A stretch of 63,951 nucleotides of DNA from Macrostomum lignano (taxonomy: Eukaryota): contig NIVC01004025.1 of NCBI GenBank assembly GCA_002269645.1, forward strand, positions 1-63,951, given 5' to 3'. The notes under the pieces were generated by a model that had not been told where the DNA came from, did not search any database, and worked only from the letters and a program-made list of their open reading frames with translations. Positions 19,065 through 63,951 of the stretch are shown one piece after another (the stretch's first letter is position 1; each line of letters begins with the position of its first letter). A program made the translations under genes and the position numbers.

Positions 19065-19459
19065 GCTTGCCGAAGTCCAGACCACTGCAGGGCCGCACGC
19101 AAGCAAGTTGGCGAAGTCGAAAAAGACGCAAAATTCTTTTGCCTTCCGGTATTAAACCTGAATTGGAGAAGAGCAGTCTGCATGGGGTGGGCGGTTGGCA
19201 GGGGAGAGGACAAGGGGATTCTATAGTTGCTGGGATCAGGGGATTGGCTGGACTGGAATTACTGCACTCCCTCAAAATCCCTACAACTCCCCCCATAGCA
19301 GCAAATCCCCAATGCTGATGCCGGGACAGCGGGTCTGACGCTACAAGTTGGCGCCCTTCCAGCCTTCTGCTCCTGCCTACCGCTTCGTCTCCCTCTCCCC
19401 ACCTCACTCTCAACCCTGTCTTTCACTCCCTTCTCACCCTTCTAACATCTCCCCGGTCT

Positions 19460-21549: not shown

Positions 21550-21895
21550 TGTGTCACCGATTTTTCACTGATTTGTCACTGAAAAGTGTCACTAATTTGT
21601 CACTGAAGAGTGTCACGGATTTGTCAGTGAAGAGTGTCACTGATTTGTCAGTGAAGAGTGTCACTAATTTGTCACTGAAGAGTGTCACTGATTTGTCAGT
21701 GAAGAGTGTCACTGATTTGTCAGTGAAGAGTGTCACTAATTTGTCACTGAAGAGTGCCACTGATTTGTCACTGAAGAGTGTCACTGATTTGTCAGTGAAG
21801 AGTGTCACTAATTTGTCACTGAAGAGTGCCACTGATTTGTCACTGAAGAGTGTCACGGATTTGTCACTGATTTGTCACTGATGAGTGTCACTAAT
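21550..21895. repeat. 24-bp minisatellite (GTGTCACTGATTTGTCAGTGAAGA)n
   Basis: About 14 copies; unit carries the hairpin TCACTGA-TTTG-TCAGTGA. Confidence 0.93.
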
Positions 21896-22284
21896 TTGTT
21901 ATTATATGCGTATTACTCATTTAAATCTACAAAATTCACTTTTTCATTCGTTAGCAAATTTTAACCTACGTTATCAGACTCAATAAAAGCAACCTTCAGT
22001 TGCTTTTTATAAAAATTTCTCAAAAAGTGAGCTAATCCTTACTCAAGCATATTTTCTGCTTTTAATCTTTTCACAGCATTCGAGACTGACGGGGTATCAG
22101 CTGCAGTTCCTGGGAGTCTGCAAGATAGCTCTGGTTCCATTAGAATCCCAGATCTAGAGATCTCATCAAAAATCATGAGATTTCACCTGAAACCATGAGA
22201 TCTGACATTAAATCATGAGATATAACCGAAAGTGAGACTCTCTAGATGTGATTGTTTTGAGATGATATTCTTGGGGATTATATT

Positions 22285-22870
22285 CTCTGAGATGAGATTC
22301 TTCTGAGATGAGATTCTCTGAGATGAGATTCTCTGAGATGAGATTCTCTGAGATGAGATTCTTCTGAGATGAGATTCTTCTGAGATGAGATTCTCTGAGA
22401 TGAGATTCTCTGAGATGAGATTCTTCTGAGATGAGATTCTTCTGAGATGAGATTCTTCTGAGATGAGATTCTCTGAGATGAGATTCTCTGAGATGAGATT
22501 CTTCTGAGATGAGATTCTCTGAGATGAGATTCTCTGAGATGAGATTCTCTGAGATTAGATTCTCTGAGATGAGACTCTCTGAGATGAGACTCTCTGAGAC
22601 GAGATTCTCTGAGATTAGATTCTCTGAGATGAGATTCTCTGAGATTGGATTGTTCTTAAATATGATTCTTATAAGATGAGATTCTCTGAGATGAGATTCT
22701 CTGAGATGAGATTCTCTGAGATGAGATTCTCTGAGATGAGATTCTCTGAGATGAGATTCTCTGAGATTGGATTCTTCTTAGATAAAATTCTTCTAAGATG
22801 AGATTCTCTAAGATGTGATTCTCTGAAATGAGATTCTCTGAGATGAGATTCTCTGAGATGAGATTCTCTC
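22285..22870. repeat. 15-bp minisatellite (GAGATTCTCTGAGAT)n
   Basis: Direct reading. Confidence 0.93.
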
Positions 22871-23134
22871 GGTTAAGATTCAGAGAATGGAATGGAGAAT
22901 GTAGATTTTTTAGGGTTAAAAAACTTGGAAGACAATTGTTTACACAGGAATGTTTATAGAAACGCACATATAGAGGCTGTTTATTATTATAGGCAAAAAA
23001 TCTAAAAAAAGGCACAAAGCTTCTTTCATGAATATTTGTCGAACACTTGAATTTTTACGGTAGTACGGCGCTTTCTGTAAAAAATGTTCACAAAATTTTT
23101 AAATCTTCATTCTTCTGTCCGCGCGCGATGAAGT

Positions 23135-31130: not shown

Positions 31131-31485
31131 CAGACTTCTCTATCTATCTATCATACCACAGTCCACAAATATAAACTTACGAAAGCAAATAAACAACAAA
31201 ACAAACTTTCTCATTTAAATCTGGAATAGAAATGTCTCGCTGTTTGATAAACAAGTTCAATATCAGTTCTTTTAATGCAGCGATTTGAATTCAAACTTTC
31301 TTTTATGTCAATTACAGTAACTTACCGTAGGAGACAATTATTGTATCATGATTTACGGTGTTCCATAGACACAAATGACATCGCTCTTAAAAAAGGATAT
31401 TGGTGTCATTCTGTATGCTCACAGTTTGTCTTGATACTGTAACTTGGACATTAAAGTTAAAATAGTAAACAGCAAGTTCGAGAAT

Positions 31486-33505
<2,020 letters not shown>

Positions 33506-33514
33506 ATTGCGTCA

Positions 33515-46724: not shown

Positions 46725-47204
46725 TCAAACAGTAGTAGTTTTCCAACGATTCCTGCAACCCAAGCGCCATCTTCTCAGAAAGGCGGCGTTCGGAAGTACA
46801 ATGTAGAAAACCGCAAGGCCAGTGGCGCAGCCTAAAACGTACGAGAATGTAGCAATTTTATATGGTTGAATGGCCTCGCTACAGTCATTCTGGACAGCGC
46901 CTGCGCTAGGGTTGGCTGCAGACGCAGCCACACTACTAGCAGGGGCAGTAGTAGTTGCGGATTCGACAGCCGCTTTAGATTGTTCCCAGAAATCTGAGCA
47001 AGCGGACTTAATTAACGGCCTGTCGCACCTGGCTGCCCAGGCTTTGCCAAAGTCGCCGCGGCACTGCGATTGACTTGGGCAGTCCTTGCAATTGTTGGCT
47101 CCCTCGCTGTCGCGATACTGGCCAGGGGGGCAGGCAGGCAGGGGAACTGCCAGCATGGGCAGCACCAGCGCCAATGTTGTTAAAAGGACCAACTGCAGCT
47201 GCAT
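46725..47204 (-). CDS. 159-aa single-pass membrane protein with one TNFR-type cysteine-rich domain (TNF receptor superfamily-like)
   Basis: True ATG; signal peptide MQLQLVLLTTLALVLPMLA; CPPGQYRDSEGANNCKDCPSQSQC...C...C (6 Cys); Ser/Thr/Ala stalk; TM IATFSYVLGCATGLAVFYIVL; basic juxtamembrane RRWRL; non-repetitive. Confidence 0.78.
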   Translation of the reverse strand: MQLQLVLLTTLALVLPMLAVPLPACPPGQYRDSEGANNCKDCPSQSQCRGDFGKAWAARCDRPLIKSACSDFWEQSKAAVESATTTAPASSVAASAANPSAGAVQNDCSEAIQPYKIATFSYVLGCATGLAVFYIVLPNAAFLRRWRLGCRNRWKTTTV

Positions 47205-47317
47205 GAAGGTGGGTGACTGAAATTTGATGGAGACTGTCTATGAATGCTTTTTTCCTGTGTCTGTTTGTCATAGTTTCCGCATTAGTATCTGCCAGTCTAT
47301 CTGCCCACCTGCCTTGA

Positions 47318-47348
<31 letters not shown>

Positions 47349-49805
47349 TGCATTAGGCATTTCTTGGGACAAGCGTGTATAAACTGACCCGTGCTATTAG
47401 GACCAAAAATGTGTTGGGCCAGGCCCAATAAGTGCGTCCCGACACTTCCAAAAATGAATTCTATTGAAATGAAAAAATATTCATTGGAACCGTCTTTCGA
47501 TTCTCCTTCCAAAAATCAATGTCATTTTTTCATATTTTTAATCAAACACGGGGAATCTAATGATTTGCAGTGTCCTAAGAAGTTTAAAAAATTATGCGAA
47601 CTGATGGTCTGATCCAACAGAACAATTGGGTCTCAAATCGGAATTCTCGTTTTATTACAATATTTCTTACAATATCAAGAAAGTCTACTACAAGTAACAG
47701 ATAGAGGTTCTCCACAGGGCTGCCAATCGACACTTGAAAGGATCCTGACATTTGGCATCGTGTTTACTATAAAATATGAAATAATTTAATAAAGATTTAG
47801 AATATTACAATTAAGCATACAAACCTTATAGATTTAGTATATTTAGATTTTTGCATAGAAACAGCTAGCATCTAAATTCATTAGCTTCCAATTTCACTTA
47901 TACACGAAACATGGCAAATTAAGGTTACATCCGCCTGTGCCCTCGGCCATTTTAACTGAAATTCTCGTTTTCAGTCAGCTGCATTAATCTATTTGTCATA
48001 TGTGAATGGGTATTAACTGACTCAAGTTAGTGACTGGAGGCCATTAACGTAAAGTGACACTTTGAGTGAGGTAGTTTTCCGGTGGAAATTCTCAGTCTTA
48101 TGAAGCGCTTTTAGAGCAAAGAAATAAAGGGCAAAGAAAAACTTTGCATTTCCCGAGAAAACCAAGGACGAGTATTAAAGGGAAACGTTTAATCTCTAAG
48201 GCTTTAAATGACTTCCTTATTGGCCTGGGTTTGGGCAGCTATACTATGTAGCAAAATGTTTTCTAGAATTGTGATAATTATCGTCTGGTATACTGAAATG
48301 TACTGAGATACGAAGAAACTTAGATGACTGCATGGACTGCTAGCACATGTTTGAGTGTCACTGTCACTGTAAAGTCTAAATCGATGACTAGTTGGCCCAA
48401 AACTAACTACTAGGCCTTCCTGAAAAACAATTCTGCTTATCTTGGATCGTAAAGATAAACCCACGTACAGAGCAGAAGTGTTAGGACAAGCGTGTACAAG
48501 ACCCAGGCAATCCCTTACCCAGGCCACGTGTACATTCCTATCGCGGCGGGGGGAAGCGGGGAGGAGAGGCGGGCGCAAGGGAGTCAGGATAAAGTTTACA
48601 CTGAAGTTGAGGCCTACAAGAGGAAGAGCCAATTCTAACGGAAAGGTACATGTAGAAGTTCCCTTTGACAAACGGCGTACTGCATATGTTCAAACGAATA
48701 TAATTCATTTACGAGACCTGCACTACACAGACAAAATGTGCCACGTCACAAGAGTTTCCATGCATGACCTGGCATGAAAAGACTTGGCTAGGAACCATTA
48801 CACATATGTAAGTAGAATTTAAAATTCTTTTTAAAATTTTATGATTAAATAAAAACTTAACCGGAATTTACATATGTACTTTTCTAAAATTCCAGATACG
48901 TTGATATCGATAAGCTACCGTTTTCTTCTATAACAAACAGATTGGCCTTCATTGTCAAGTAAGTCTTGTCTCGTACTCGTATATGTCGTATTTTTTGTAC
49001 GTTGAAAAAAATAATAAGCAGCCTAGTAATACTCTGAGCTCAGTGAAATATAAGAGAGGCGGCACGATCACCTTATTTATCAATTAATTTACAACAGCCA
49101 GTTGAGCAATCATAAGTAGGCAAAATTTACACTTCTAGGAAGAACAAATTTTACTAAAAGTTTCAATCAAAACATTTAGGAAAGAAATCTCGCATGACAC
49201 ATCGCCCACAGTACTAGAGACTTGGAGAAATACCATGTGAGTTTGCTGGGCAACTAATATAATATATTACTGTTATAATTCGATAGTCAAATTATTTTTC
49301 TACTCAAAGCAGTATTATTACATAACTAAAGAACAGTATAAAATGACAGCATTCTAGAACGAGAAACAAAGCTTACTGCAAAGGCAAACGCCAAAAGAAA
49401 AGCAGGGCAGAGTCAGCAACAAAAAAGAAGCTCATCTGATTGGGAAGATGAGCGGTCAGCAAAGAGATAGGATCTCAGAAAATTGCAACTCCCAGTAACT
49501 GAAACTTAATTGCAATAAGTGTTTTGTTTTCTAGGGCATTATTAAAACAAGCAAGCCTGCCTGCAGTCAGCTAAGGGCAAAGTAAGTTGCTGCGGCACTA
49601 TCGAGAAAGTGAAATTTGTACTCCATCTAACTGACACAAGCAGCACCGTTGGGACAAACTACGAATATTTTAATTGTACAGACATTTACAGCATTTATAC
49701 AGCATTTATACAGCATTTATTAGAACAGCGACATTTAAATCTGTTTTCAAACAAATCAGACAGATTTCTCAATAAGTGATTTTTCTTTTGTGCGCCCACG
49801 CACAG

Positions 49806-49991
49806 GTTCGTCCGCATTCAAACTCGCCGCTGCATCCGTCATTTATTTCAATTGCTGCTCACAAGCCGCAGCAGCAGCAGCAGCAGCAGCCGCTATCCGT
49901 GCAGGCAGTCAGTCTATTTGTGAATTTTCTGGTGGATCTGAAGAAAACCCGTCCGGCACAGGATTAAAGAGAAAGAGACGATCTGTTTTGG
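49806..49991 (+). other. Putative first array exon (186 nt, phase 1-1, open frame GSSAFKLAAASVIYFNCCSQ(A)10IRAG...KRKRRSVLG)
   Basis: Own acceptor ccacgcacag|GT and donor TTG G|GTGAGT; length divisible by 3. Confidence 0.55.
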
Positions 49992-50378
49992 GTGAGTATT
50001 ATCTGCTGTAGAAGTATTGTACACCAGAGTACTTGTGTTACTTGGTAGAGCACAATTCAAAAGCAATGCAACAATCTCAGTGGCATTGTTGGGACACAAG
50101 CTACAAACGCAATGAATAGTAAACACAGCCCAGCATAGCTCAAGGGTAGTAATTTGTTGGGCATTTATTGGGACATTGCAGCCAGGCCTATTTTTTGAAC
50201 AGCATTTGTTGGGTCGCACTTATTGGGACAATACTGATTCTAATCGCGACTACTTCTGAGTTCTGACTTTTCAAAACAGACCCAGCATTAGTTGAACACG
50301 TTCTATTAAAGGGTTCCTTTATAGCCTATTAATGATTACTAAAGCAAGCCTATCTTAATTGATTTCTTTTCCTCGCAG

Positions 50379-50500
50379 ATTCTGAAGTCAGCCACGCCAG
50401 CGACATGCCTAAGAGACAAGAATGCGCTTTAACGATCAGCAGCGAGCATTCTGATCTCGCCGCTGCATCCGTCATTTGGTTCACTTGCTGCTCACAAGCC

Positions 50501-50560
<60 letters not shown>

Positions 50561-50660
50561 GCTATCCGTGCAGGCAGTCAGTCTATTTGTGAATTTTCTG
50601 GTGGATCTGAAGAAAACCCGTCCGGCACAGGATTAAAGAGAAAGAGACGATCTGTTTTGG
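50379..50660 (+). other. Representative repeated putative exon (282 nt, phase 1-1)
   Basis: Acceptor ttaattgatttcttttcctcgcag|AT and donor TTG G|GTGAGT; open frame DSEVSHASDMPKRQEC...CCSQ(A)22IRAGSQSICEFSGGSEENPSGTGLKRKRRSVLG; coding status unproven. Confidence 0.55.
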
Positions 50661-51169
50661 GTGAGTATTATCTGCTGTAGAAGTATTGTACACCAGAGTA
50701 CTTGTGTTACTTGGTAGAGCACAATTCAAAAGCAATGCAACAATCTCAGTGGCATTGTTGGGACACAAGCTACAAACGCAATGAATAGTAAACACAGCCC
50801 AGCATAGCTCAAGGCTAGTAATTTGTTGGGCATTTATTGGGACATTGCAGCCAGGCCTATTTTTTGAACAGCATTTGTTGGGTCGCACTTATTGGGACAA
50901 TACTGATTCTAATCGCGACTACTTCTGAGTTCTGACTTTTCAAAACAGACCCAGCATTAGTTGAACACGTTCTATTAAAGGGTTCCTTTATAGCCTATTA
51001 ATGATTACTAAAGCAAGCCTATCTTAATTGATTTCTTTTCCTCGCAGATTCTGAAGTCAGCCACGCCAGCGACATGCCTAAGAGACAAGAATGCGCTTTA
51101 ACGATCAGCAGCGAGCATTCTGATCTCGCCGCTGCATCCGTCATTTGGTTCACTTGCTGCTCACAAGCC

Positions 51170-51211
<42 letters not shown>

Positions 51212-52453
51212 GCTATCCGTGCAGGCAGTCAGTCTATTTGTGAATTTTCTGGTGGATCTGAAGAAAACCCGTCCGGCACAGGATTAAAGAGAAAGAGACG
51301 ATCTGTTTTGGGTGAGTATTATCTGCTGTAGAAGTATTGTACACCAGAGTACTTGTGTTACCTGGTAGAGCACAATTCAAAAGCAATGCAACAATCTCAG
51401 TGGCATTGTTGGGACACAAGCTACAAACGCAATGAATAGTAAACACAGCCCAGCCTAGCTCAAGGCTAGTAATTTGTTGGGCATTTATTGGGACATTGCA
51501 GCCAGGCCTATTTTTTGAACAGCATTTGTTGGGTCGCACTTATTGGGACAATACTGATTCTAATCGCGACTACTTCTGAGTTCTGACTTTTCAAAACAGA
51601 CCCAGCATTAGTTGAACACGTTCTATTAAAGGGTTCCTTTATAGCCTATTAATGATTACTAAAGCAAGCCTATCTTAATTGATTTCTTTTCCTCGCAGAT
51701 TCTGAAGTCAGCAACGCCAGCGACATGCCTAAGAGACAAGAATGCGCTTTAACGATCAGCAGCGAGCATTCTGATCTCGCCGCTGCATCCGTCATTTGGT
51801 TCACTTGCTGCTCACAAGCCGCAGCAGCAGCAGCAGCAGCAGCCGCTATCCGTGCAGGCAGTCAGTCTATTTGTGAATTTTCTGGTGGATCTGAAGAAAA
51901 CCCGTCCGGCACAGGATTAAAGAGAAAGAGACGATCTGTTTTGGGTGAGTATTATCTGCTGTAGAAGTATTGTACACCAGAGTACTTGTGTTACTTGGTA
52001 GAGCACAATTCAAAAGCAATGCAACAATCTCAGTGGCATTGTTGGGACACAAGCTACAAACGCAATGAATAGTAAACACAGCCCAGCCTAGCTCAAGGCT
52101 AGTAATTTGTTGGGCATTTATTGGGACATTGCAGCCAGGCCTATTTTTTGAACAGCATTTGTTGGGTCGCACTTATTGGGACAATACTGATTCTAATCGC
52201 GACTACTTCTGAGTTCTGACTTTTCAAAACAGACCCAGCATTAGTTGAACACGTTCTATTAAAGGGTTCCTTTATAGCCTATTAATGATTACTAAAGCAA
52301 GCCTATCTTAATTGATTTCTTTTCCTCGCAGATTCTGAAGTCAGCCACGCCAGCGACATGCCTAAGAGACAAGAATGCGCTTTAACGATCAGCAGCGAGC
52401 ATTCTGATCTCGCCGCTGCATCCGTCATTTGGTTCACTTGCTGCTCACAAGCC

Positions 52454-52537
<84 letters not shown>

Positions 52538-53095
52538 CGCTATCCGTGCAGGCAGTCAGTTAAAGAGAAAGAGACGATCTGTTTTGGGTGAGTATTATCT
52601 GCTGTAGAAGTATTGTACACCAGAGTACTTGTGTTACTTGGTAGAGCACAATTCAAAAGCAATGCAACAATCTCAGTGGCATTGTTGGGACACAAGCTAC
52701 AAACGCAATGAATAGTAAACACAGCCCAGCTAGCTCAAGGCTAGTAATTTGTTGGGCATTTATTGGGACATTGCAGCCAGGCCTATTTTTTGAACAGCAT
52801 TTGTTGGGTCGCACTTATTGGGACAATACTGATTCTAATCGCGACTACTTCTGAGTTCTGACTTTTCAAAACAGACCCAGCATTAGTTGAACACGTTCTA
52901 TTAAAGGGTTCCTTTATAGCCTATTAATGATTACTAAAGCAAGCCTATCTTAATTGATTTCTTTTCCTCGCAGATTCTGAAGTCAGCCACGCCAGCGACA
53001 TGCCTAAGAGACAAGAATGCGCTTTAACGATCAGCAGCGAGCATTCTGATCTCGCCGCTGCATCCGTCATTTGGTTCACTTGCTGCTCACAAGCC

Positions 53096-53137
<42 letters not shown>

Positions 53138-54378
53138 GCTATCCGTGCAGGCAGTCAGTCTATTTGTGAATTTTCTGGTGGATCTGAAGAAAACCCGTCC
53201 GGCACAGGATTAAAGAGAAAGAGACGATCTGTTTTGGGTGAGTATTATCTGCTGTAGAAGTATTGTACACCAGAGTACTTGTGTTACTGGTAGAGCACAA
53301 TTCAAAAGCAATGCAACAATCTCAGTGGCATTGTTGGGACACAAGCTACAAACGCAATGAATAGTAAACACAGCCCAGCCTAGCTCAAGGCTAGTAATTT
53401 GTTGGGCATTTATTGGGACATTGCAGCCAGGCCTATTTTTTGAACAGCATTTGTTGGGTCGCACTTATTGGGACAATACTGATTCTAATCGCGACTACTT
53501 CTGAGTTCTGACTTTTCAAAACAGACCCAGCATTAGTTGAACACGTTCTATTAAAGGGTTCCTTTATAGCCTATTAATGATTACTAAAGCAAGCCTATCT
53601 TAATTGATTTCTTTTCCTCGCAGATTCTGAAGTCAGCAACGCCAGCGACATGCCTAAGAGACAAGAATGCGCTTTAACGATCAGCAGCGAGCATTCTGAT
53701 CTCGCCGCTGCATCCGTCATTTGGTTCACTTGCTGCTCACAAGCCGCAGCAGCAGCAGCAGCAGCAGCCGCTATCCGTGCAGGCAGTCAGTCTATTTGTG
53801 AATTTTCTGGTGGATCTGAAGAAAACCCGTCCGGCACAGGATTAAAGAGAAAGAGACGATCTGTTTTGGGTGAGTATTATCTGCTGTAGAAGTATTGTAC
53901 ACCAGAGTACTTGTGTTACTTGGTAGAGCACAATTCAAAAGCAATGCAACAATCTCAGTGGCATTGTTGGGACACAAGCTACAAACGCAATGAATAGTAA
54001 ACACAGCCCAGCCTAGCTCAAGGCTAGTAATTTGTTGGGCATTTATTGGGACATTGCAGCCAGGCCTATTTTTTGAACAGCATTTGTTGGGTCGCACTTA
54101 TTGGGACAATACTGATTCTAATCGCGACTACTTCTGAGTTCTGACTTTTCAAAACAGACCCAGCATTAGTTGAACACGTTCTATTAAAGGGTTCCTTTAT
54201 AGCCTATTAATGATTACTAAAGCAAGCCTATCTTAATTGATTTCTTTTCCTCGCAGATTCTGAAGTCAGCCACGCCAGCGACATGCCTAAGAGACAAGAA
54301 TGCGCTTTAACGATCAGCAGCGAGCATTCTGATCTCGCCGCTGCATCCGTCATTTGGTTCACTTGCTGCTCACAAGCC

Positions 54379-54417
<39 letters not shown>

Positions 54418-55656
54418 GCTATCCGTGCAGGCAGTCAGTCTATTTGTGAATTTTCTGGTGGATCTGAAGAAAACCCGTCCGGCACAGGATTAAAGAGAAA
54501 GAGACGATCTGTTTTGGGTGAGTATTATCTGCTGTAGAAGTATTGTACACCAGAGTACTTGTGTTACTGGTAGAGCACAATTCAAAAGCAATGCAACAAT
54601 CTCAGTGGCATTGTTGGGACACAAGCTACAAACGCAATGAATAGTAAACACAGCCCAGCCTAGCTCAAGGCTAGTAATTTGTTGGGCATTTATTGGGACA
54701 TTGCAGCCAGGCCTATTTTTTGAACAGCATTTGTTGGGTCGCACTTATTGGGACAATACTGATTCTAATCGCGACTACTTCTGAGTTCTGACTTTTCAAA
54801 ACAGACCCAGCATTAGTTGAACACGTTCTATTAAAGGGTTCCTTTATAGCCTATTAATGATTACTAAAGCAAGCCTATCTTAATTGATTTCTTTTCCTCG
54901 CAGATTCTGAAGTCAGCAACGCCAGCGACATGCCTAAGAGACAAGAATGCGCTTTAACGATCAGCAGCGAGCATTCTGATCTCGCCGCTGCATCCGTCAT
55001 TTGGTTCACTTGCTGCTCACAAGCCGCAGCAGCAGCAGCAGCAGCCGCTATCCGTGCAGGCAGTCAGTCTATTTGTGAATTTTCTGGTGGATCTGAAGAA
55101 AACCCGTCCGGCACAGGATTAAAGAGAAAGAGACGATCTGTTTTGGGTGAGTATTATCTGCTGTAGAAGTATTGTACACCAGAGTACTTGTGTTACTTGG
55201 TAGAGCACAATTCAAAAGCAATGCAACAATCTCAGTGGCATTGTTGGGACACAAGCTACAAACGCAATGAATAGTAAACACAGCCCAGCCTAGCTCAAGG
55301 CTAGTAATTTGTTGGGCATTTATTGGGACATTGCAGCCAGGCCTATTTTTTGAACAGCATTTGTTGGGTCGCACTTATTGGGACAATACTGATTCTAATC
55401 GCGACTACTTCTGAGTTCTGACTTTTCAAAACAGACCCAGCATTAGTTGAACACGTTCTATTAAAGGGTTCCTTTATAGCCTATTAATGATTACTAAAGC
55501 AAGCCTATCTTAATTGATTTCTTTTCCTCGCAGATTCTGAAGTCAGCCACGCCAGCGACATGCCTAAGAGACAAGAATGCGCTTTAACGATCAGCAGCGA
55601 GCATTCTGATCTCGCCGCTGCATCCGTCATTTGGTTCACTTGCTGCTCACAAGCGC

Positions 55657-55688
<32 letters not shown>

Positions 55689-56934
55689 TATCCGTGCAGG
55701 CAGTCAGTCTATTTGTGAATTTTCTGGTGGATCTGAAGAAAACCCGTCCGGCACAGGATTAAAGAGAAAGAGACGATCTGTTTTGGGTGAGTATTATCTG
55801 CTGTAGAAGTATTGTACACCAGAGTACTTGTGTTACTTGGTAGAGCACAATTCAAAAGCAATGCAACAATCTCAGTGGCATTGTTGGGACACAAGCTACA
55901 AACGCAATGAATAGTAAACACAGCCCAGCCTAGCTCAAGGCTAGTAATTTGTTGGGCATTTATTGGGACATTGCAGCCAGGCCTATTTTTTGAACAGCAT
56001 TTGTTGGGTCGCACTTATTGGGACAATACTGATTCTAATCGCGACTACTTCTGAGTTCTGACTTTTCAAAACAGACCCAGCATTAGTTGAACACGTTCTA
56101 TTAAAGGGTTCCTTTATAGCCTATTAATGATTACTAAAGCAAGCCTATCTTAATTGATTTCTTTTCCTCGCAGATTCTGAAGTCAGCCACGCCAGCGACA
56201 TGCCTAAGAGACAAGAATGCGCTTTAACGATCAGCAGCGAGCATTCTGATCTCGCCGCTGCATCCGTCATTTGGTTCACTTGCTGCTCACAAGCCGCAGC
56301 AGCAGCAGCAGCAGCAGCAGCAGCCGCTATCCGTGCAGGCAGTCAGTCTATTTGTGAATTTTCTGGTGGATCTGAAGAAAACCCGTCCGGCACAGGATTA
56401 AAGAGAAAGAGACGATCTGTTTTGGGTGAGTATTATCTGCTGTAGAAGTATTGTACACCAGAGTACTTGTGTTACTTGGTAGAGCACAATTCAAAAGCAA
56501 TGCAACAATCTCAGTGGCATTGTTGGGACACAAGCTACAAACGCAATGAATAGTAAACACAGCCCAGCCTAGCTCAAGGCTAGTAATTTGTTGGGCATTT
56601 ATTGGGACATTGCAGCCAGGCCTATTTTTTGAACAGCATTTGTTGGGTCGCACTTATTGGGACAATACTGATTCTAATCGCGACTACTTCTGAGTTCTGA
56701 CTTTTCAAAACAGACCCAGCATTAGTTGAACACGTTCTATTAAAGGGTTCCTTTATAGCCTATTAATGATTACTAAAGCAAGCCTATCTTAATTGATTTC
56801 TTTTCCTCGCAGATTCTGAAGTCAGCCACGCCAGCGACATGCCTAAGAGACAAGAATGCGCTTTAACGATCAGCAGCGAGCATTCTGATCTCGCCGCTGC
56901 ATCCGTCATTTGGTTCACTTGCTGCTCACAAGCC

Positions 56935-56985
<51 letters not shown>

Positions 56986-59501
56986 GCTATCCGTGCAGGC
57001 AGTCAGTCTATTTGTGAATTTTCTGGTGGATCTGAAGAAAACCCGTCCGGCACAGGATTAAAGAGAAAGAGACGATCTGTTTTGGGTGAGTATTATCTGC
57101 TGTAGAAGTATTGTACACCAGAGTACTTGTGTTACTGGTAGAGCACAATTCAAAAGCAATGCAACAATCTCAGTGGCATTGTTGGGACACAAGCTACAAA
57201 CGCAATGAATAGTAAACACAGCCCAGCCTAGCTCAAGGCTAGTAATTTGTTGGGCATTTATTGGGACATTGCAGCCAGGCCTATTTTTTGAACAGCATTT
57301 GTTGGGTCGCACTTATTGGGACAATACTGATTCTAATCGCGACTACTTCTGAGTTCTGACTTTTCAAAACAGACCCAGCATTAGTTGAACACGTTCTATT
57401 AAAGGGTTCCTTTATAGCCTATTAATGATTACTAAAGCAAGCCTATCTTAATTGATTTCTTTTCCTCGCAGATTCTGAAGTCAGCCACGCCAGCGACATG
57501 CCTAAGAGACAAGAATGCGCTTTAACGATCAGCAGCGAGCATTCTGATCTCGCCGCTGCATCCGTCATTTGGTTCACTTGCTGCTCACAAGCCGCAGCAG
57601 CACAGCAGCAGCAGCCGCTATCCGTGCAGGCAGTCAGTCTATTTGTGAATTTTCTGGTGGATCTGAAGAAAACCCGTCCGGCACAGGATTAAAGAGAAAG
57701 AGACGATCTGTTTTGGGTGAGTATTATCTGCTGTAGAAGTATTGTACACCAGAGTACTTGTGTTACTTGGTAGAGCACAATTCAAAAGCAATGCAACAAT
57801 CTCAGTGGCATTGTTGGGACACAAGCTACAAACGCAATGAATAGTAAACACAGCCCAGCCTAGCTCAAGGCTAGTAATTTGTTGGGCATTTATTGGGACA
57901 TTGCAGCCAGGCCTATTTTTTGAACAGCATTTGTTGGGTCGCACTTATTGGGACAATACTGATTCTAATCGCGACTACTTCTGAGTTCTGACTTTTCAAA
58001 CAGACCCAGCATTAGTTGAACACGTTCTATTAAAGGGTTCCTTTATAGCCTATTAATGATTACTAAAGCAAGCCTATCTTAATTGATTTCTTTTCCTCGC
58101 AGATTCTGAAGTCAGCCACGCCAGCGACATGCCTAAGAGACAAGAATGCGCTTTAACGATCAGCAGCGAGCATTCTGATCTCGCCGCTGCATCCGTCATT
58201 TGGTTCACTTGCTGCTCACAAGCCGCAGCAGCAGCAGCCAGCAGCAGCAGCAGCAGCAGCCGCTATCCGTGCAGGCAGTCAGTCTATTTGTGAATTTTCT
58301 GGTGGATCTGAAGAAAACCCGTCCGGCACAGGATTAAAGAGAAAGAGACGATCTGTTTTGGGTGAGTATTATCTGCTGTAGAAGTATTGTACACCAGAGT
58401 ACTTGTGTTACTTGGTAGAGCACAATTCAAAAGCAATGCAACAATCTCAGTGGCATTGTTGGGACACAAGCTACAAACGCAATGAATAGTAAACACAGCC
58501 CAGCCTAGCTCAAGGCTAGTAATTTGTTGGGCATTTATTGGGACATTGCAGCCAGGCCTATTTTTTGAACAGCATTTGTTGGGTCGCACTTATTGGGACA
58601 ATACTGATTCTAATCGCGACTACTTCTGAGTTCTGACTTTTCAAAACAGACCCAGCATTAGTTGAACACGTTCTATTAAAGGGTTCCTTTATAGCCTATT
58701 AATGATTACTAAAGCAAGCCTATCTTAATTGATTTCTTTTCCTCGCAGATTCTGAAGTCAGCCACGCCAGCGACATGCCTAAGAGACAAGAATGCGCTTT
58801 AACGATCAGCAGCGAGCATTCTGATCTCGCCGCTGCATCCGTCATTTGGTTCACTTGCTGCTCACAAGCCGCAGCAGCACAGCAGCAGCAGCCGCTATCC
58901 GTGCAGGCAGTCAGTCTATTTGTGAATTTTCTGGTGGATCTGAAGAAAACCCGTCCGGCACAGGATTAAAGAGAAAGAGACGATCTGTTTTGGGTGAGTA
59001 TTATCTGCTGTAGAAGTATTGTACACCAGAGTACTTGTGTTACTTGGTAGAGCACAATTCAAAAGCAATGCAACAATCTCAGTGGCATTGTTGGGACACA
59101 AGCTACAAACGCAATGAATAGTAAACACAGCCCAGCCTAGCTCAAGGCTAGTAATTTGTTGGGCATTTATTGGGACATTGCAGCCAGGCCTATTTTTTGA
59201 ACAGCATTTGTTGGGTCGCACTTATTGGGACAATACTGATTCTAATCGCGACTACTTCTGAGTTCTGACTTTTCAAAACAGACCCAGCATTAGTTGAACA
59301 CGTTCTATTAAAGGGTTCCTTTATAGCCTATTAATGATTACTAAAGCAAGCCTATCTTAATTGATTTCTTTTCCTCGCAGATTCTGAAGTCAGCCACGCC
59401 AGCGACATGCCTAAGAGACAAGAATGCGCTTTAACGATCAGCAGCGAGCATTCTGATCTCGCCGCTGCATCCGTCATTTGGTTCACTTGCTGCTCACAGC
59501 C

Positions 59502-59537
<36 letters not shown>

Positions 59538-60775
59538 GCTATCCGTGCAGGCAGTCAGTCTATTTGTGAATTTTCTGGTGGATCTGAAGAAAACCCGTCC
59601 GGCACAGGATTAAAGAGAAAGAGACGATCTGTTTTGGGTGAGTATTATCTGCTGTAGAAGTATTGTACACCAGAGTACTTGTGTTACTTGGTAGAGCACA
59701 ATTCAAAAGCAATGCAACAATCTCAGTGGCATTGTTGGGACACAAGCTACAAACGCAATGAATAGTAAACACAGCCCAGCCTAGCTCAAGGCTAGTAATT
59801 TGTTGGGCATTTATTGGGACATTGCAGCCAGGCCTATTTTTTGAACAGCATTTGTTGGGTCGCACTTATTGGGACAATACTGATTCTAATCGCGACTACT
59901 TCTGAGTTCTGACTTTTCAAAACAGACCCAGCATTAGTTGAACACGTTCTATTAAAGGGTTCCTTTATAGCCTATTAATGATTACTAAAGCAAGCCTATC
60001 TTAATTGATTTCTTTTCCTCGCAGATTCTGAAGTCAGCCACGCCAGCGACATGCCTAAGAGACAAGAATGCGCTTTAACGATCAGCAGCGAGCATTCTGA
60101 TCTCGCCGCTGCATCCGTCATTTGGTTCACTTGCTGCTCACAAGCCGCAGCGCAGCAGCAGCAGCAGCAGCCGCTATCCGTGCAGGCAGTCAGTCTATTT
60201 GTGAATTTTCTGGTGGATCTGAAGAAAACCCGTCCGGCACAGGATTAAAGAGAAAGAGACGATCTGTTTTGGGTGAGTATTATCTGCTGTAGAAGTATTG
60301 TACACCAGAGTACTTGTGTTACTTGGTAGAGCACAATTCAAAAGCAATGCAACAATCTCAGTGGCATTGTTGGGACACAAGCTACAAACGCAATGAATAG
60401 TAAACACAGCCCAGCCTAGCTCAAGGCTAGTAATTTGTTGGGCATTTATTGGGACATTGCAGCCAGGCCTATTTTTTGAACAGCATTTGTTGGGTCGCAC
60501 TTATTGGGACAATACTGATTCTAATCGCGACTACTTCTGAGTTCTGACTTTTCAAAACAGACCCAGCATTAGTTGAACACGTTCTATTAAAGGGTTCCTT
60601 TATAGCCTATTAATGATTACTAAAGCAAGCCTATCTTAATTGATTTCTTTTCCTCGCAGATTCTGAAGTCAGCCACGCCAGCGACATGCCTAAGAGACAA
60701 GAATGCGCTTTAACGATCAGCAGCGAGCATTCTGATCTCGCCGCTGCATCCGTCATTTGGTTCACTTGCTGCTCA

Positions 60776-60822
<47 letters not shown>

Positions 60823-61435
60823 GCTATCCGTGCAGGCAGTCAGTCTATTTGTGAATTTTCTGGTGGATCTGAAGAAAACCCGTCCGGCACAGGATTAAAG
60901 AGAAAGAGACGATCTGTTTTGGGTGAGTATTATCTGCTGTAGAAGTATTGTACACCAGAGTACTTGTGTTACTTGGTAGAGCACAATTCAAAAGCAATGC
61001 AACAATCTCAGTGGCATTGTTGGGACACAAGCTACAAACGCAATGAATAGTAAACACAGCCCAGCCTAGCTCAAGGCTAGTAATTTGTTGGGCATTTATT
61101 GGGACATTGCAGCCAGGCCTATTTTTTGAACAGCATTTGTTGGGTCGCACTTATTGGGACAATACTGATTCTAATCGCGACTACTTCTGAGTTCTGACTT
61201 TTCAAAACAGACCCAGCATTAGTTGAACACGTTCTATTAAAGGGTTCCTTTATAGCCTATTAATGATTACTAAAGCAAGCCTATCTTAATTGATTTCTTT
61301 TCCTCGCAGATTCTGAAGTCAGCCACGCCAGCGACATGCCTAAGAGACAAGAATGCGCTTTAACGATCAGCAGCGAGCATTCTGATCTCGCCGCTGCATC
61401 CGTCATTTGGTTCACTTGCTGCTCACAAGCCGCAG

Positions 61436-61471
<36 letters not shown>

Positions 61472-62717
61472 GCTATCCGTGCAGGCAGTCAGTCTATTTG
61501 TGAATTTTCTGGTGGATCTGAAGAAAACCCGTCCGGCACAGGATTAAAGAGAAAGAGACGATCTGTTTTGGGTGAGTATTATCTGCTGTAGAAGTATTGT
61601 ACACCAGAGTACTTGTGTTACTTGGTAGAGCACAATTCAAAAGCAATGCAACAATCTCAGTGGCATTGTTGGGACACAAGCTACAAACGCAATGAATAGT
61701 AAACACAGCCCAGCCTAGCTCAAGGCTAGTAATTTGTTGGGCATTTATTGGGACATTGCAGCCAGGCCTATTTTTTGAACAGCATTTGTTGGGTCGCACT
61801 TATTGGGACAATACTGATTCTAATCGCGACTACTTCTGAGTTCTGACTTTTCAAAACAGACCCAGCATTAGTTGAACACGTTCTATTAAAGGGTTCCTTT
61901 ATAGCCTATTAATGATTACTAAAGCAAGCCTATCTTAATTGATTTCTTTTCCTCGCAGATTCTGAAGTCAGCCACGCCAGCGACATGCCTAAGAGACAAG
62001 AATGCGCTTTAACGATCAGCAGCGAGCATTCTGATCTCGCCGCTGCATCCGTCATTTGGTTCACTTGCTGCTCACAAGCCGCAGCAGCAGCAGCAGCAGC
62101 AGCAGCAGCCGCTATCCGTGCAGGCAGTCAGTCTATTTGTGAATTTTCTGGTGGATCTGAAGAAAACCCGTCCGGCACAGGATTAAAGAGAAAGAGACGA
62201 TCTGTTTTGGGTGAGTATTATCTGCTGTAGAAGTATTGTACACCAGAGTACTTGTGTTACTTGGTAGAGCACAATTCAAAAGCAATGCAACAATCTCAGT
62301 GGCATTGTTGGGACACAAGCTACAAACGCAATGAATAGTAAACACAGCCCAGCCTAGCTCAAGGCTAGTAATTTGTTGGGCATTTATTGGGACATTGCAG
62401 CCAGGCCTATTTTTTGAACAGCATTTGTTGGGTCGCACTTATTGGGACAATACTGATTCTAATCGCGACTACTTCTGAGTTCTGACTTTTCAAAACAGAC
62501 CCAGCATTAGTTGAACACGTTCTATTAAAGGGTTCCTTTATAGCCTATTAATGATTACTAAAGCAAGCCTATCTTAATTGATTTCTTTTCCTCGCAGATT
62601 CTGAAGTCAGCCACGCCAGCGACATGCCTAAGAGACAAGAATGCGCTTTAACGATCAGCAGCGAGCATTCTGATCTCGCCGCTGCATCCGTCATTTGGTT
62701 CACTTGCTGCTCACAAG

Positions 62718-62756
<39 letters not shown>

Positions 62757-63358
62757 GCTATCCGTGCAGGCAGTCAGTCTTTGTGAATTTTCTGGTGGAT
62801 CTGAAGAAAACCCGTCCGGCACAGGATTAAAGAGAAAGAGACGATCTGTTTTGGGTGAGTATTATCTGCTGTAGAAGTATTGTACACCAGAGTACTTGTG
62901 TTACTTGGTAGAGCACAATTCAAAAGCAATGCAACAATCTCAGTGGCATTGTTGGGACACAAGCTACAAACGCAATGAATAGTAAACACAGCCCAGCCTA
63001 GCTCAAGGCTAGTAATTTGTTGGGCATTTATTGGGACATTGCAGCCAGGCCTATTTTTTGAACAGCATTTGTTGGGTCGCACTTATTGGGACAATACTGA
63101 TTCTAATCGCGACTACTTCTGAGTTCTGACTTTTCAAAACAGACCCAGCATTAGTTGAACACGTTCTATTAAAGGGTTCCTTTATAGCCTATTAATGATT
63201 ACTAAAGCAAGCCTATCTTAATTGATTTCTTTTCCTCGCAGATTCTGAAGTCAGCCACGCCAGCGACATGCCTAAGAGACAAGAATGCGCTTTAACGATC
63301 AGCAGCGAGCATTCTGATCTCGCCGCTGCATCCGTCATTTGGTTCACTTGCTGCTCAC

Positions 63359-63399
<41 letters not shown>

Positions 63400-63951
63400 G
63401 CTATCCGTGCAGGCAGTCAGTCTATTTGTGAATTTTCTGGTGGATCTGAAGAAAACCCGTCCGGCACAGGATTAAAGAGAAAGAGACGATCTGTTTTGGG
63501 TGAGTATTATCTGCTGTAGAAGTATTGTACACCAGAGTACTTGTGTTACTTGGTAGAGCACAATTCAAAAGCAATGCAACAATCTCAGTGGCATTGTTGG
63601 GACACAAGCTACAAACGCAATGAATAGTAAACACAGCCCAGCCTAGCTCAAGGCTAGTAATTTGTTGGGCATTTATTGGGACATTGCAGCCAGGCCTATT
63701 TTTTGAACAGCATTTGTTGGGTCGCACTTATTGGGACAATACTGATTCTAATCGCGACTACTTCTGAGTTCTGACTTTTCAAAACAGACCCAGCATTAGT
63801 TGAACACGTTCTATTAAAGGGTTCCTTTATAGCCTATTAATGATTACTAAAGCAAGCCTATCTTAATTGATTTCTTTTCCTCGCAGATTCTGAAGTCAGC
63901 ACGCCAGCGACATGCCTAAGAGACAAGAATGCGCTTTAACGATCAGCAGCG

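What the first reader, a model, noticed from the sequence alone, without database searches (positions are those of the whole stretch)
49806..63951. 14-kb tandem array of splice-ready exon+intron cassettes (best candidate for a novel system)
Seen: each ~640-bp unit has a polypyrimidine acceptor (ttaattgatttcttttcctcgcag|), a ~245-285-nt segment and a consensus donor (G|GTGAGT). In intact units the segment is a multiple of 3, phase 1 at both ends and stop-free, so any number or subset could be spliced in frame. The divergent first unit uses a different acceptor yet keeps phase 1. Inference: a giant modular repeat protein, a cassette or mutually exclusive exon bank (Dscam-like combinatorics), or a repeat-exon lncRNA (FIRRE-like), rather than inert satellite. 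An open frame of this length can arise by chance, so coding is unproven.
Basis: partly seen in the sequence, partly recalled or inferred. Interest (0 to 1): 0.85.

Follow-up and report, generated by a model that had tools for sequence, protein, structure and literature searches.

The report
Flatworm gene built from repeated exons
The 14-kb array is a real run of near-identical exon-plus-intron cassettes from a gene family found only in the flatworm Macrostomum lignano; it is an unstudied example of a known kind of gene architecture, not a new system.

Summary
Window 49806-63951 has one truncated first cassette, 21 full cassettes and a cut-off one. Each has a canonical acceptor, a 243-282 nt exon, a GTGAGT donor and a 386-387 nt intron. 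Eleven of the 21 full exons are in frame and stop-free; all ten frame breaks lie in or next to the (GCA)n tract.

The genome is Macrostomum lignano Mlig_3_7, and the contig ends inside the array. Complete paralogues show a whole gene: leader, truncated first cassette, 8-15 cassettes, then a degenerate terminal cassette with a stop and AATAAA. A diverged sister family has the same plan.

GenBank proteins from the transcript-based annotation carry the predicted exon-exon junction, so the cassettes are transcribed and cis-spliced. The family sits on about 49 contigs and has no homologue outside the species.

Coding is probable, not proven. Only one frame is open in both families and dN/dS is about 0.5. 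But substitutions show no codon periodicity, the introns are as conserved as the exon ends, and no start codon with a clear signal peptide was found. The conserved KRKRR motif could be a cleavage site, a nuclear localisation signal or just a purine-rich splicing enhancer.

Dscam-like combinatorics is not supported. The closest analogue is the Schistosoma SmPoMuc repeated-exon genes.

The parts
47318..47350 (.). (GT)n microsatellite at the 5' edge of the copied gene module
   Evidence: Homology of the window to all paralogous copies (C271, C12, C257, C2503) starts here. The flanks beyond it differ in every copy.
47351..49805 (+). Leader / promoter region shared by all family-A copies (96.5-98.9% identical) and, from about 48483 on, homologous to family B (66-78%)
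48652..48807 (+). Conserved block ending in the donor ACATAT|GTAAGT; putative non-coding leader exon E1 (5' end undefined)
   Evidence: Block and donor are conserved between families A and B (coordinates). It contains no ATG that feeds the main frame (and reading of the sequence).
48896..48958 (+). Putative 63-nt leader exon E2 (ttccag|ATACG...TTGTCAA|GTAAGT)
   Evidence: Acceptor and donor are conserved in families A and B. In the frame that would enter the cassettes it has a TAA.
49448..49454 (+). Candidate mini start exon ATGAGCG|GTCAGC. It would give MSG-SSAFKLAAASVIYFNCCSQAAAA..., a signal-peptide-like N-terminus
   Evidence: Best phase-1 ATG+donor found in the leader, but the donor is weak and is deleted in family B. 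Speculative.
49806..49991 (+). First cassette exon, truncated (starts at unit position 68), 186 nt, open in phase 1-1, no ATG
   Evidence: All paralogous arrays have the same truncated first cassette.
49992..50378 (+). Cassette intron (387 nt), representative of all 22. Features: GTGAGT donor, three + strand TTGGGACA motifs, ATTAAA at intron position 314, TACTAAA branch point 36 nt before the acceptor, pyrimidine tract, CAG acceptor
   Evidence: The intron is 75-93% identical to the family-B intron. No Rfam match. Fold z-score -0.77.
50379..50660 (+). Cassette exon 2, 282 nt, in frame (22 Ala). Holds the first in-frame ATG (MPKRQEC)
51048..51311 (+). Cassette exon 3, 264 nt, in frame
51699..51944 (+). 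Cassette exon 4, 246 nt, in frame (N variant)
52332..52587 (+). Cassette exon 5, 256 nt, out of frame, with a 51-nt deletion in its 3' part
52974..53237 (+). Cassette exon 6, 264 nt, in frame
53624..53869 (+). Cassette exon 7, 246 nt, in frame (N variant)
54257..54517 (+). Cassette exon 8, 261 nt, in frame
54904..55146 (+). Cassette exon 9, 243 nt, in frame (N variant); translated as P0001
55534..55786 (+). Cassette exon 10, 253 nt, frameshift in the (GCA)n tract
56174..56425 (+). Cassette exon 11, 252 nt, in frame
56813..57085 (+). Cassette exon 12, 273 nt, in frame
57472..61571 (+). Cassettes 13-19 (exons 57472-57716, 58103-58361, 58749-58993, 59381-59637, 60025-60272, 60660-60922, 61310-61571). 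All are shifted by 1-2 nt inside or next to the (GCA)n tract
   Evidence: Exons 13 and 15 carry the identical lesion.
61959..62210 (+). Cassette exon 20, 252 nt, in frame
62598..62854 (+). Cassette exon 21, 257 nt, frameshifted
63242..63499 (+). Cassette exon 22, 258 nt, in frame
63887..63951 (+). Start of cassette exon 23, cut by the contig end, with a 1-nt deletion relative to the consensus

Best explanation
The array is the 5' part of one member of a multigene family specific to Macrostomum lignano. Each gene in the family is built from tandem copies of a 0.64-kb 'one exon + one intron' cassette.

Shown:
- The genome is M. lignano Mlig_3_7.
- A complete gene has four parts: a roughly 2.5-kb leader, a first cassette truncated at unit position 68, N near-identical cassettes, and a degenerate last cassette that has lost the donor and carries a stop codon and AATAAA.
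- Every cassette has a donor, branch point, pyrimidine tract and acceptor. These signals are conserved in a sister family that is 20% diverged.
- Models from the transcript-based annotation join consecutive cassettes at exactly the predicted junction.
- Cassettes within an array are homogenised (99.7-100% identical). Only the (GCA)n length varies, which points to unequal crossing-over or gene conversion plus microsatellite slippage.
- The whole transcription unit occurs at many loci with unrelated flanks, and its homology ends at (TG)n tracts.

Inferred:
- The spliced RNA is translated in the single frame that stays open. The product would be a repetitive, low-complexity protein with units of the form [acidic/Ser-rich] - [hydrophobic WFTCC + polyAla] - [Gly/Ser/acidic] - KRKRR. 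Translation would probably start at the MPKRQEC methionine of cassette 2.
- The amino-acid sequence is only weakly constrained.
- If the protein enters the secretory pathway, RKRR|S and PKR|Q would be furin/convertase sites. Cleavage would release many copies of a conserved 14-mer (SVL[D/A]S[E/K]VS[H/N]ASDMP) and a variable Ala-rich 60-70-mer. This last step is the least secure.
- The ten frame-broken cassettes of the window are either uncorrected PacBio indels in an unpolishable repeat or true decay of this copy.
For: Species. All homologues are M. lignano proteins. The genome has 764 Mb in 5269 contigs, against 764 Mb and 5270 scaffolds for Mlig_3_7 (PMC5730564).

Gene ends. The terminal exon reads ...CCSQ(A)nICAAVS-TAA, with AATAAA about 110 nt later, in C271, C12, C257 and C1686. 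All copies share the same truncated first cassette and leader.

Intact copies. In the large contigs 7/8, 11/11 and 8/9 internal exons are in frame.

Sister family B. It has the same architecture, splice signals, phase and open frame.

Transcription and cis-splicing. GenBank PAA53853.1 and BOX15_Mlig026960g1 contain RRSVL|ASEVSN, the latter across three cassettes plus a terminal exon. That GenBank annotation is the genome-guided transcriptome.

Open frame. Only one of three frames is open in both A and B. Indels that shift the middle of the exon are compensated. dN/dS is 0.50, Fisher p=0.024. Of the 150 best exon hits genome-wide, 146 have no stop. The C-terminal tail GAG[YF]F is shared by A-like and B models.

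Spread. The family is on about 49 contigs with 780-1230 first-look exon candidates. The flanks differ even between copies that are 99.5% identical.
Against: Protein-level selection is weak. Substitutions between A and B fall 10/9/14 on codon positions 1/2/3 (p=0.53). Cysteine positions and the polyAla/hydrophobic segment are not conserved: family B reads QEQQQ there.

The introns (75-93% identical) are as conserved as the exon ends and more conserved than the exon middle (57-62%). The constraint is therefore not mainly on the protein.

The conserved 'basic sites' coincide with purine-rich AAGAGAAAGAGA-type tracts next to the splice sites. They could be exonic splicing enhancers and not cleavage signals.

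No upstream exon supplies an ATG in frame with a good donor. Family B has no hydrophobic N-terminus, and some B copies have a stop or frameshift in the first or terminal exon.

One subfamily carries an in-frame TAG in nearly every cassette yet persists as long arrays.

In the window itself 10 of 21 cassettes are out of frame.

AlphaFold gives no confident fold (pLDDT 52, single sequence), and there is no Pfam domain.
Confidence: 0.6

Rival explanations
1. Spliced but non-coding or decaying repeat. The cassettes are transcribed and spliced, but the open frame is a historical accident or a relic. The unit behaves as a satellite-like element, kept uniform by concerted evolution, with constraint on RNA and splicing signals rather than on a protein. 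The window copy in particular would be a pseudogene.
For: Substitutions show no codon periodicity. The intron is as conserved as the exon ends, and the upstream flank less so. The conserved KRKRR and PKR motifs overlap purine-rich enhancer-like tracts. No convincing start or signal peptide was found. A subfamily with an in-frame TAG still forms arrays. Ten of 21 window cassettes are frameshifted, two with the identical lesion. By simulation, family B would keep the ORF by chance in about 18% of cases for substitutions alone. The family has a satellite-like copy number.
Against: One and the same frame is open in both families, despite indels that needed compensation. dN/dS is below 1 (p=0.024). 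A defined terminal exon with a stop shortly before AATAAA exists in both families, and the C-terminal tail motif is conserved. Almost all cassettes genome-wide are stop-free. The well-assembled copies are nearly all in frame.
Confidence: 0.22
2. Operon-like array of mini-genes. Each cassette would be its own cistron, with 3'-end formation at the ATTAAA in the 'intron' and SL trans-splicing at the next acceptor about 70 nt downstream. Each monocistronic mRNA would encode an 85-aa protein, MPKRQEC...RRSVLGEYYLL.
For: ATTAAA sits at intron position 314, inside a block 93% conserved with family B. Each unit has a self-contained ORF with its own ATG that stops 6 codons into the intron. M. lignano trans-splices 30% of its genes, and its operons have spacers of about 100 bp (PMC8629364). 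One GenBank model begins a few nt upstream of a cassette acceptor.
Against: Every cassette ends in a strong, conserved GTGAG donor. By the Conrad rule quoted in PMC8629364, an acceptor with a donor upstream in cis is cis-spliced. Annotated transcripts show the cis junctions. The terminal cassette has a different, dedicated stop and AATAAA. In C2092 the 'spacers' are 2.9 kb.
Confidence: 0.06
3. Host gene for intron-encoded small RNAs (SNORD116-like). The exons would be filler, and the invariant 387-nt introns would carry a snoRNA, miRNA or other small RNA.
For: Intron length is invariant (386-387 nt) and intron conservation is high. The introns carry strand-specific repeated TTGGGACA motifs.
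Against: No Rfam family matched even at E<=10 apart from microsatellite noise. The intron folds no better than shuffles (z=-0.77). In family B the intron tolerates expansion to 2.9 kb by an internal minisatellite.
Confidence: 0.03
4. Dscam-like bank of mutually exclusive or combinatorial exons that generates protein diversity.
For: The symmetric phase 1-1 exons would allow any subset to be spliced in frame.
Against: The cassettes are 99.7-100% identical apart from polyAla length and one H/N site. Annotated transcripts include consecutive cassettes. No selector or docking structure is evident.
Confidence: 0.02
5. Assembly artefact: an over-expanded or mis-joined repeat.
For: The contig ends in the array. 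The assembly is PacBio RSII/Canu with only 64% error-free bases by REAPR. Frameshifts pile up towards the contig end.
Against: Arrays of the same cassette, with both flanks, lie inside large contigs (C12 1.7 Mb, C257 590 kb, C271 475 kb). They are also mirrored in models from the independent ML2 assembly.
Confidence: 0.02

Closest known systems
SmPoMuc polymorphic mucin genes of Schistosoma mansoni (PMC2576457)
   Same: Both are from flatworms. Both are multigene families in which one exon plus its flanking intron is repeated in tandem: about 1-kb units, up to about 20 per gene, with intronic parts >94% identical, which blocks assembly. The repeats include microsatellites. Some groups are pseudogenes. 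Splicing is aberrant or alternative, and repeat number varies.
   Different: The SmPoMuc repeat exon is 27 nt (9 aa, mucin-type) and follows a clear signal-peptide exon and 13 unique 3' exons. Here the exon is about 250 nt, nearly the whole gene is the repeat, and no signal-peptide exon was found. There is no sequence similarity: no hit outside M. lignano in 1.84 billion representative proteins.
Multi-copy prohormone / polyprotein precursors cleaved at dibasic sites (e.g. FMRFamide-type neuropeptide precursors, yeast alpha-factor, profilaggrin; own knowledge)
   Same: A short conserved peptide (SVL[D/A]S[E/K]VS[H/N]ASDMP) is flanked by RKRR and KR and separated by a fast-evolving spacer, repeated many times.
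   Different: No demonstrated signal peptide. No amidation glycine. The basic motifs may be splicing enhancers. Processing is untested.
Large in-gene exon VNTRs such as LPA kringle IV-2 and NBPF Olduvai repeats (own knowledge)
   Same: Copy-number-variable tandem repeats whose unit includes exon(s) and intron(s), kept in frame and homogenised by unequal crossing-over.
   Different: Those units encode folded domains (kringle, Olduvai) within otherwise unique genes. Here the unit is low-complexity and gave no confident fold.
Schistosome micro-exon genes (MEGs; own knowledge)
   Same: Flatworm, lineage-specific genes made of symmetric exons, so that exon skipping keeps the frame.
   Different: MEG exons are 6-36 nt and all different. 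Here the exons are about 250 nt and identical.
Satellite DNA / SNORD116-type tandem host-gene arrays (own knowledge)
   Same: Head-to-tail homogenised arrays at many loci. In the SNORD116 type, each unit is an exon plus an intron.
   Different: A conserved open frame and dedicated first and terminal exons. No small RNA was detected in the intron.

Membership tests
Tandem repeated-exon (exon+intron VNTR) genes, SmPoMuc type | The genomic tandem repeat unit contains one exon with its flanking intron, with near-identical introns | tested here: met
   22 cassettes, 99.7-100% identical, introns 386-387 nt.
Tandem repeated-exon (exon+intron VNTR) genes, SmPoMuc type | The repeat exon is symmetric, so any copy number keeps the frame, and transcripts contain several repeats | tested here: met
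   Phase 1-1, length divisible by 3 in intact units. P0019 joins three cassettes.
Tandem repeated-exon (exon+intron VNTR) genes, SmPoMuc type | Signal-peptide first exon and mucin-type Ser/Thr/Pro repeat | tested here: not met
   No start exon with a signal peptide was found in the 2.5-kb leader. The unit is not PTS-rich.
Tandem repeated-exon (exon+intron VNTR) genes, SmPoMuc type | Sequence homology to SmPoMuc | tested here: not met
   Only M. lignano proteins were hit in 1.84 billion representative proteins and the 5.8-billion-sequence protein database.
Dibasic-cleaved polyprotein / prohormone precursor | N-terminal signal peptide | tested here: inconclusive
   UniProt labels some MPKRQEC-initiated models 'Secreted protein' and others not. 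The n-region is 17 aa and acidic. Family B has no hydrophobic segment.
Dibasic-cleaved polyprotein / prohormone precursor | Repeated conserved peptide flanked by K/R sites, with variable spacers | tested here: met
   KRKRR-SVLxSxVSxASDMP-KR is conserved between A and B (omega 0.27 at the exon ends), while the middle is divergent.
Dibasic-cleaved polyprotein / prohormone precursor | Processed peptides exist in vivo | not testable with these tools
   Needs peptidomics.
Dscam-type mutually exclusive exon cluster | Tandem alternative exons that differ in sequence | tested here: not met
   The cassettes are identical except for polyAla length and an H/N site.
Dscam-type mutually exclusive exon cluster | Exactly one exon of the cluster per mRNA | tested here: not met
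   Models from the transcript-based annotation contain consecutive cassettes.
Repeat-exon lncRNA (FIRRE-like) | No conserved open reading frame | tested here: not met
   One frame is open in families A and B and in 146 of the 150 best hits. Constraint on the protein is weak, however.
snoRNA/miRNA host-gene array | A recognisable small RNA in each intron | tested here: not met
   No Rfam match. The fold z-score is -0.77. A novel RNA cannot be excluded.
SL trans-spliced operon | Poly(A) signal about 100 nt upstream of a trans-splice acceptor, with no cis donor upstream | tested here: inconclusive
   ATTAAA lies 73 nt before the acceptor, but a strong cis donor is present in every unit. SL reads are not available.
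Satellite DNA | Homogenised head-to-tail arrays at many loci | tested here: met
   About 49 contigs and 780-1230 exon candidates.
Satellite DNA | Non-coding, not part of a gene structure | tested here: not met
   Leader, terminal exon, stop, AATAAA and spliced annotated transcripts are all present.

The most novel reading that the evidence does not exclude
The unit that spreads may not be a normal gene duplicate. It could be a self-contained 'gene-satellite' module: promoter/leader, an expandable array of exon+intron cassettes, and a terminator. This module has been copied to dozens of unrelated sites, with breakpoints in (TG)n tracts. Its introns carry strand-specific TTGGGACA repeats and are as constrained as its exons. 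On this reading it would be a new kind of selfish or domesticated element that rides on the splicing machinery. Alternatively it could be a copy-number-tunable factory for a rapidly evolving peptide, for example a reproductive or defensive secretion, in which cassette number sets the dose.
Probability: 0.12. Interest if true: 0.7.

Novelty: new member of a known kind. Interest (0 to 1): 0.4.

Why it matters
The array shows that at least part of the unusually heavy tandem-repeat load of the M. lignano genome is expressed gene structure, not junk. It also gives a free-living counterpart to the schistosome SmPoMuc repeated-exon genes.

These arrays break assemblies: this contig ends in one. They also mislead gene predictors: several UniProt models stitch frames together through improbable splice sites or carry spurious names such as 'Rho-GAP domain-containing'. 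Annotators therefore gain from recognising the family.

If the product is a processed polyprotein, cassette number would set peptide dose and could vary between worms. M. lignano has transgenesis and RNAi, so this can be tested directly.

Tried and rejected
Pfam scan of the unit: only an insignificant TMEM108 hit.

AlphaFold2 of one cassette: pLDDT 52, not used for a fold search.

Rfam at E<=10 over the leader and three cassettes: only microsatellite noise. The intron is not more structured than shuffles.

Homologues outside the species: none in 1.84 billion representative proteins or the 5.8-billion-sequence protein database.

A start exon with a signal peptide: every ATG...GT phase-1 combination in the 2.45-kb leader was enumerated. 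The only candidate (ATGAGCG|GTCAGC at 49448) is weak and absent from family B. Joining the conserved leader exons E1 and E2 to cassette 1 gives no ATG in the main frame.

The ATG at the end of the spliced leader (SL), joined to cassette 1, opens only a 54-codon ORF in the polyGln frame. Joined to an internal cassette it opens an 18-codon ORF (my own reading of the sequence, using the SL sequence).

Within-family dN/dS: no power, with only two shared exon variants, both nonsynonymous.

The look-up of encoding contigs for the GenBank protein: nothing on record, as records of this genome are withheld.

Further genome DNA, wanted for the TAG subfamily, C3014 and C487, could not be fetched.

Literature searches for the family, its locus tags or M. 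lignano satellites found nothing. The Wasik 2015 genome paper is not held.

Several UniProt ML2 models use junctions such as ACCC|GTCCGG or IRAG|NSEVS to change frame. I treat these as predictor artefacts, not evidence of isoforms.

Full report
**1. What is in the sequence**

Window 49806-63951 is a head-to-tail array. The strings TCCTCGCAG and TTTTGG|GTGAGT each occur 22 times in strict alternation. They delimit exon-like segments of 243-282 nt and intron-like segments of 386-387 nt.

All length variation sits in an (AGC/GCA)n microsatellite inside the exon. Outside it the units are 99.7-100% identical.

Each intron carries a GTGAGT donor, a TACTAAA branch-point-like motif 36 nt before the acceptor, a pyrimidine tract and a CAG acceptor. 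These fit the M. lignano cis-splice consensus GT[G/A]AG ... CAG reported in PMC8629364.

Read in phase 1, 11 of the 21 complete exons are stop-free with a length divisible by 3. Ten are shifted by 1-2 nt within or next to the microsatellite, and one of these also has a 51-nt deletion. Eight of the ten lie in the distal half of the array.

The first unit (49806-49991) is a truncated cassette with its own acceptor and is open in the same phase. The contig ends at 63951, inside cassette 23.

**2. Whose genome, and how common**

The genome has 764 Mb in 5269 contigs. Every protein homologue found is from Macrostomum lignano. The size and contig number match the Mlig_3_7 assembly: PacBio/Canu, 764 Mb, 5270 scaffolds, 15% simple and tandem repeats, strong redundancy (PMC5730564).

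The same cassette forms arrays on about 49 contigs, with 780-1230 first-look exon candidates. No homologue exists outside this species in 1.84 billion representative proteins.

**3. The complete gene, seen in paralogues**

Copies inside large contigs have both ends: C271, C12, C257 and C1686. All start with the same roughly 2.45-kb leader (96.5-98.9% identical to window 47315-49805) and the same first cassette truncated at unit position 68.

All end in a degenerate cassette that lacks the donor. It reads ...CCSQ(A)nICAAVS-TAA and is followed about 110 nt later by AATAAA, then by a 38-50-bp minisatellite.

C271 is a 10-exon gene whose frame is broken by a single 1-nt deletion. In the large contigs 7/8, 11/11 and 8/9 internal exons are in frame. 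The small contigs (this window, C1686, C2503) have many more single-base lesions, some outside the microsatellite. That pattern fits consensus errors in a repeat that cannot be polished, although two window cassettes share an identical lesion. I leave error versus decay open for the window copy.

**4. A diverged sister family**

Family B (UniProt A0A1I8HX90; loci C2092, C1526, C2516, C2189, C630) has the same plan. It has a homologous leader (66-78% identical), a truncated first cassette behind the acceptor gtacgcacag|GTTCAG, and internal exons of 240 nt bounded by ttcttcgcag|CTTCT and CTGG|GTGAGC. It also has the same branch-point motif, a terminal cassette and the same 3' minisatellite.

In C2092 the intron has grown to 2.9 kb by amplification of an internal 125-bp sub-repeat. 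C1526 has only a first and a terminal exon.

In both families exactly one of the three exon frames is stop-free, and it is the phase-1 frame.

**5. Is it expressed and spliced?**

The GenBank annotation of Mlig_3_7 is the genome-guided transcriptome. Two of its proteins belong to the family:
- PAA53853.1 (BOX15_Mlig033615g2) contains GTGLKRKRRSVL|ASEVSNASDMP.
- BOX15_Mlig026960g1 (236 aa) runs through three cassettes with two such junctions and ends in a terminal exon...IRAGSQLIDEFSGRAGYFLSF*. Its best genomic matches are the C487 and C90 arrays.

UniProt models from the independent ML2 assembly contain RRSVL|DSEVS, the exact junction predicted for this window. Cis-splicing of consecutive cassettes is thus supported by existing transcript-based annotation, though not for this very locus.

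**6. Is it coding?**

For:
- The chance that a shuffled exon is open in a given frame is 1.8%.
- Family B keeps the same frame open after about 45 substitutions (18% by simulation) and several indels that had to sum to a multiple of 3.
- Part of the exon middle is read in a different frame relative to nucleotide homology. The frame was kept while the sequence was not.
- dN/dS is 0.50 overall and 0.27 at the exon ends (Fisher p=0.024).
- A-like and B terminal exons share a GAG[YF]F tail.
- Of the 150 best exon hits genome-wide, 146 have no stop.

Against:
- Differences between A and B fall 10/9/14 on codon positions 1/2/3, which shows no periodicity.
- Cysteines and the hydrophobic/polyAla segment are not conserved. 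Family B reads the microsatellite as QEQQQ.
- The intron is 75-93% identical between the families, as good as the exon ends (88-93%) and better than the exon middle (57-62%) or the leader (66-78%).
- The conserved PKR and KRKRR motifs are translations of purine-rich AAGAGA-type tracts next to the splice sites, where exonic splicing enhancers are expected.
- No upstream exon provides an in-frame ATG. The first in-frame ATG is MPKRQEC in cassette 2. Its N-terminus is only borderline signal-peptide-like, and UniProt calls some such models 'Secreted protein' and others not.
- A subfamily on C56, C90, C4527, C3682 and C1277 carries an in-frame TAG in nearly every cassette.
- A single cassette gives no confident AlphaFold model and no Pfam domain.

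I rate translation of a repetitive low-complexity protein as more likely than not. Furin-type processing into peptides is a plausible but unproven add-on.

**7. Other readings**

- Small-RNA host gene. Rfam finds nothing in the cassettes and the intron is not unusually structured. This reading is unsupported.
- Operon-like mini-genes. There is an ATTAAA 73 nt before each acceptor and a self-contained 85-aa ORF per unit, and M. lignano has SL trans-splicing and operons. The strong cis donor in every unit and the annotated cis junctions argue against it.
- Dscam-like choice. There is nothing to choose between identical exons.

**8. How the arrays evolve**

Near-identity within arrays contrasts with 3-6% divergence between arrays. 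Cassette numbers vary (10, 11, at least 17, at least 23), and the window shows a three-unit higher-order pattern of polyAla lengths. All this points to unequal crossing-over or conversion plus microsatellite slippage.

Homology between copies begins and ends at (TG)n tracts. The flanks are unrelated even for C271 and C12, which are 99.5% identical. The whole transcription unit has therefore been copied as a module. I could not establish the mechanism.

**9. Comparison with known systems and verdict**

The architecture matches the SmPoMuc genes of Schistosoma mansoni. These have about 1-kb exon-2+intron repeats, up to about 20 per gene, with >94% identical introns that prevent assembly, and they form a multigene family with pseudogene groups (PMC2576457). 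There is no sequence relationship, no mucin-type repeat, no clear signal peptide, and the exon here is ten times larger.

This is a new, uncharacterised member of a known kind of gene architecture. It is of moderate interest, mainly for flatworm genomics and annotation.

Noticed in passing
window 4561-5181 (-) and 18579-19151 (-): Exons of a voltage-gated K+ channel gene on the minus strand. The T1/BTB_2 domain (PF02214, E=1e-21) is at 18.6-19.2 kb and the S4-pore Ion_trans domain (PF00520, E=2e-30, with TVGYGD) at 4.6-5.2 kb. Its introns are packed with unrelated minisatellites.
   Followed up: partly
window 1-47300: Dozens of different micro- and minisatellite arrays (periods 2-164 bp, 0.03-2 kb each) occur every 1-2 kb, for example (TATC)n at 8070-9103 and its complement at 31484-33506. 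This fits the 15% simple/tandem repeat content reported for this genome.
   Followed up: partly
window 46725-47237 (-): A 170-codon open frame pointing away from the array has a signal-peptide-like start (MQLQLVLLTTLALVLPMLAVPLPA) and a Cys-rich segment. It gives only a sub-threshold ephrin-receptor-like match (E=7e-4). It may be the first exon of a divergently oriented neighbour gene.
   Followed up: partly
window 49992-63886 (every intron) and 47364, 49649: The motif TTGGGACA (context GCAYTTRTTGGGACA) occurs 66 times in the array (3 per intron), always on the + strand. It occurs twice in the leader and never in the other 47 kb. It is also the core of the minisatellite 3' of complete copies and of the 125-bp intronic sub-repeat amplified in family B. 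Its function is unknown.
   Followed up: partly
L015:3399-8312 (C12 about 1221.3-1226.2 kb): A non-LTR retrotransposon with a 1637-codon open frame (endonuclease, RVT_1, RNase H) is inserted exactly in the (GCA)n tract of one cassette of the C12 paralogue. A different insertion of about 0.9 kb sits in the same tract in C1686 (about 3940-4835). The microsatellite may be a preferred target.
   Followed up: partly
C12 local 21240-23285 (L015/L016): An element of about 2 kb with terminal inverted repeats of about 32 bp (CACAGATACTATAAACACTAGATAGGCCACTC) and a duplicated GGTCGCAC target is inserted in a cassette intron.
   Followed up: no
C56:649.5-657.5 kb, C90:291.5-294.9 kb, C4527, C3682, C1277: A subfamily with a 623-bp period carries one in-frame TAG in almost every cassette, when aligned to family B, yet forms long arrays on at least five contigs. 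On C90 it lies 4.6 kb from an intact array. The DNA could not be fetched.
   Followed up: no
module ends: window 47318-47350; C271 local about 17100; C12 local about 26700; C257rc about 20880; C1686 about 12640: The copied gene module is bounded by (TG)n on the 3' side in all copies and on the 5' side in most. The left end (GTGCATTAGGCATTTCTTGGGACAAG) and the reverse complement of the right end (GTGCACGAGGCACTTATTGGCCAAG) are about 70% alike. This may be a weak terminal inverted repeat or just the TTGGGAC motif in opposite orientation (comparison by eye).
   Followed up: partly
UniProt A0A1I8H9C4, A0A1I8HKX3, A0A1I8FS11, A0A1I8JIZ4, A0A1I8JHC9: Family members in UniProt carry misleading automatic names (Rho-GAP, DRIM, Dymeclin, UCH domain-containing). 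Several models change frame through non-consensus splice sites. These are probably predictor artefacts on an error-rich assembly.
   Followed up: partly
window 50661-51047 (-), repeated in each unit: A 101-codon stop-free stretch runs on the minus strand across the intron (VRPNKCCSKNRPGC...). It is probably chance.
   Followed up: no
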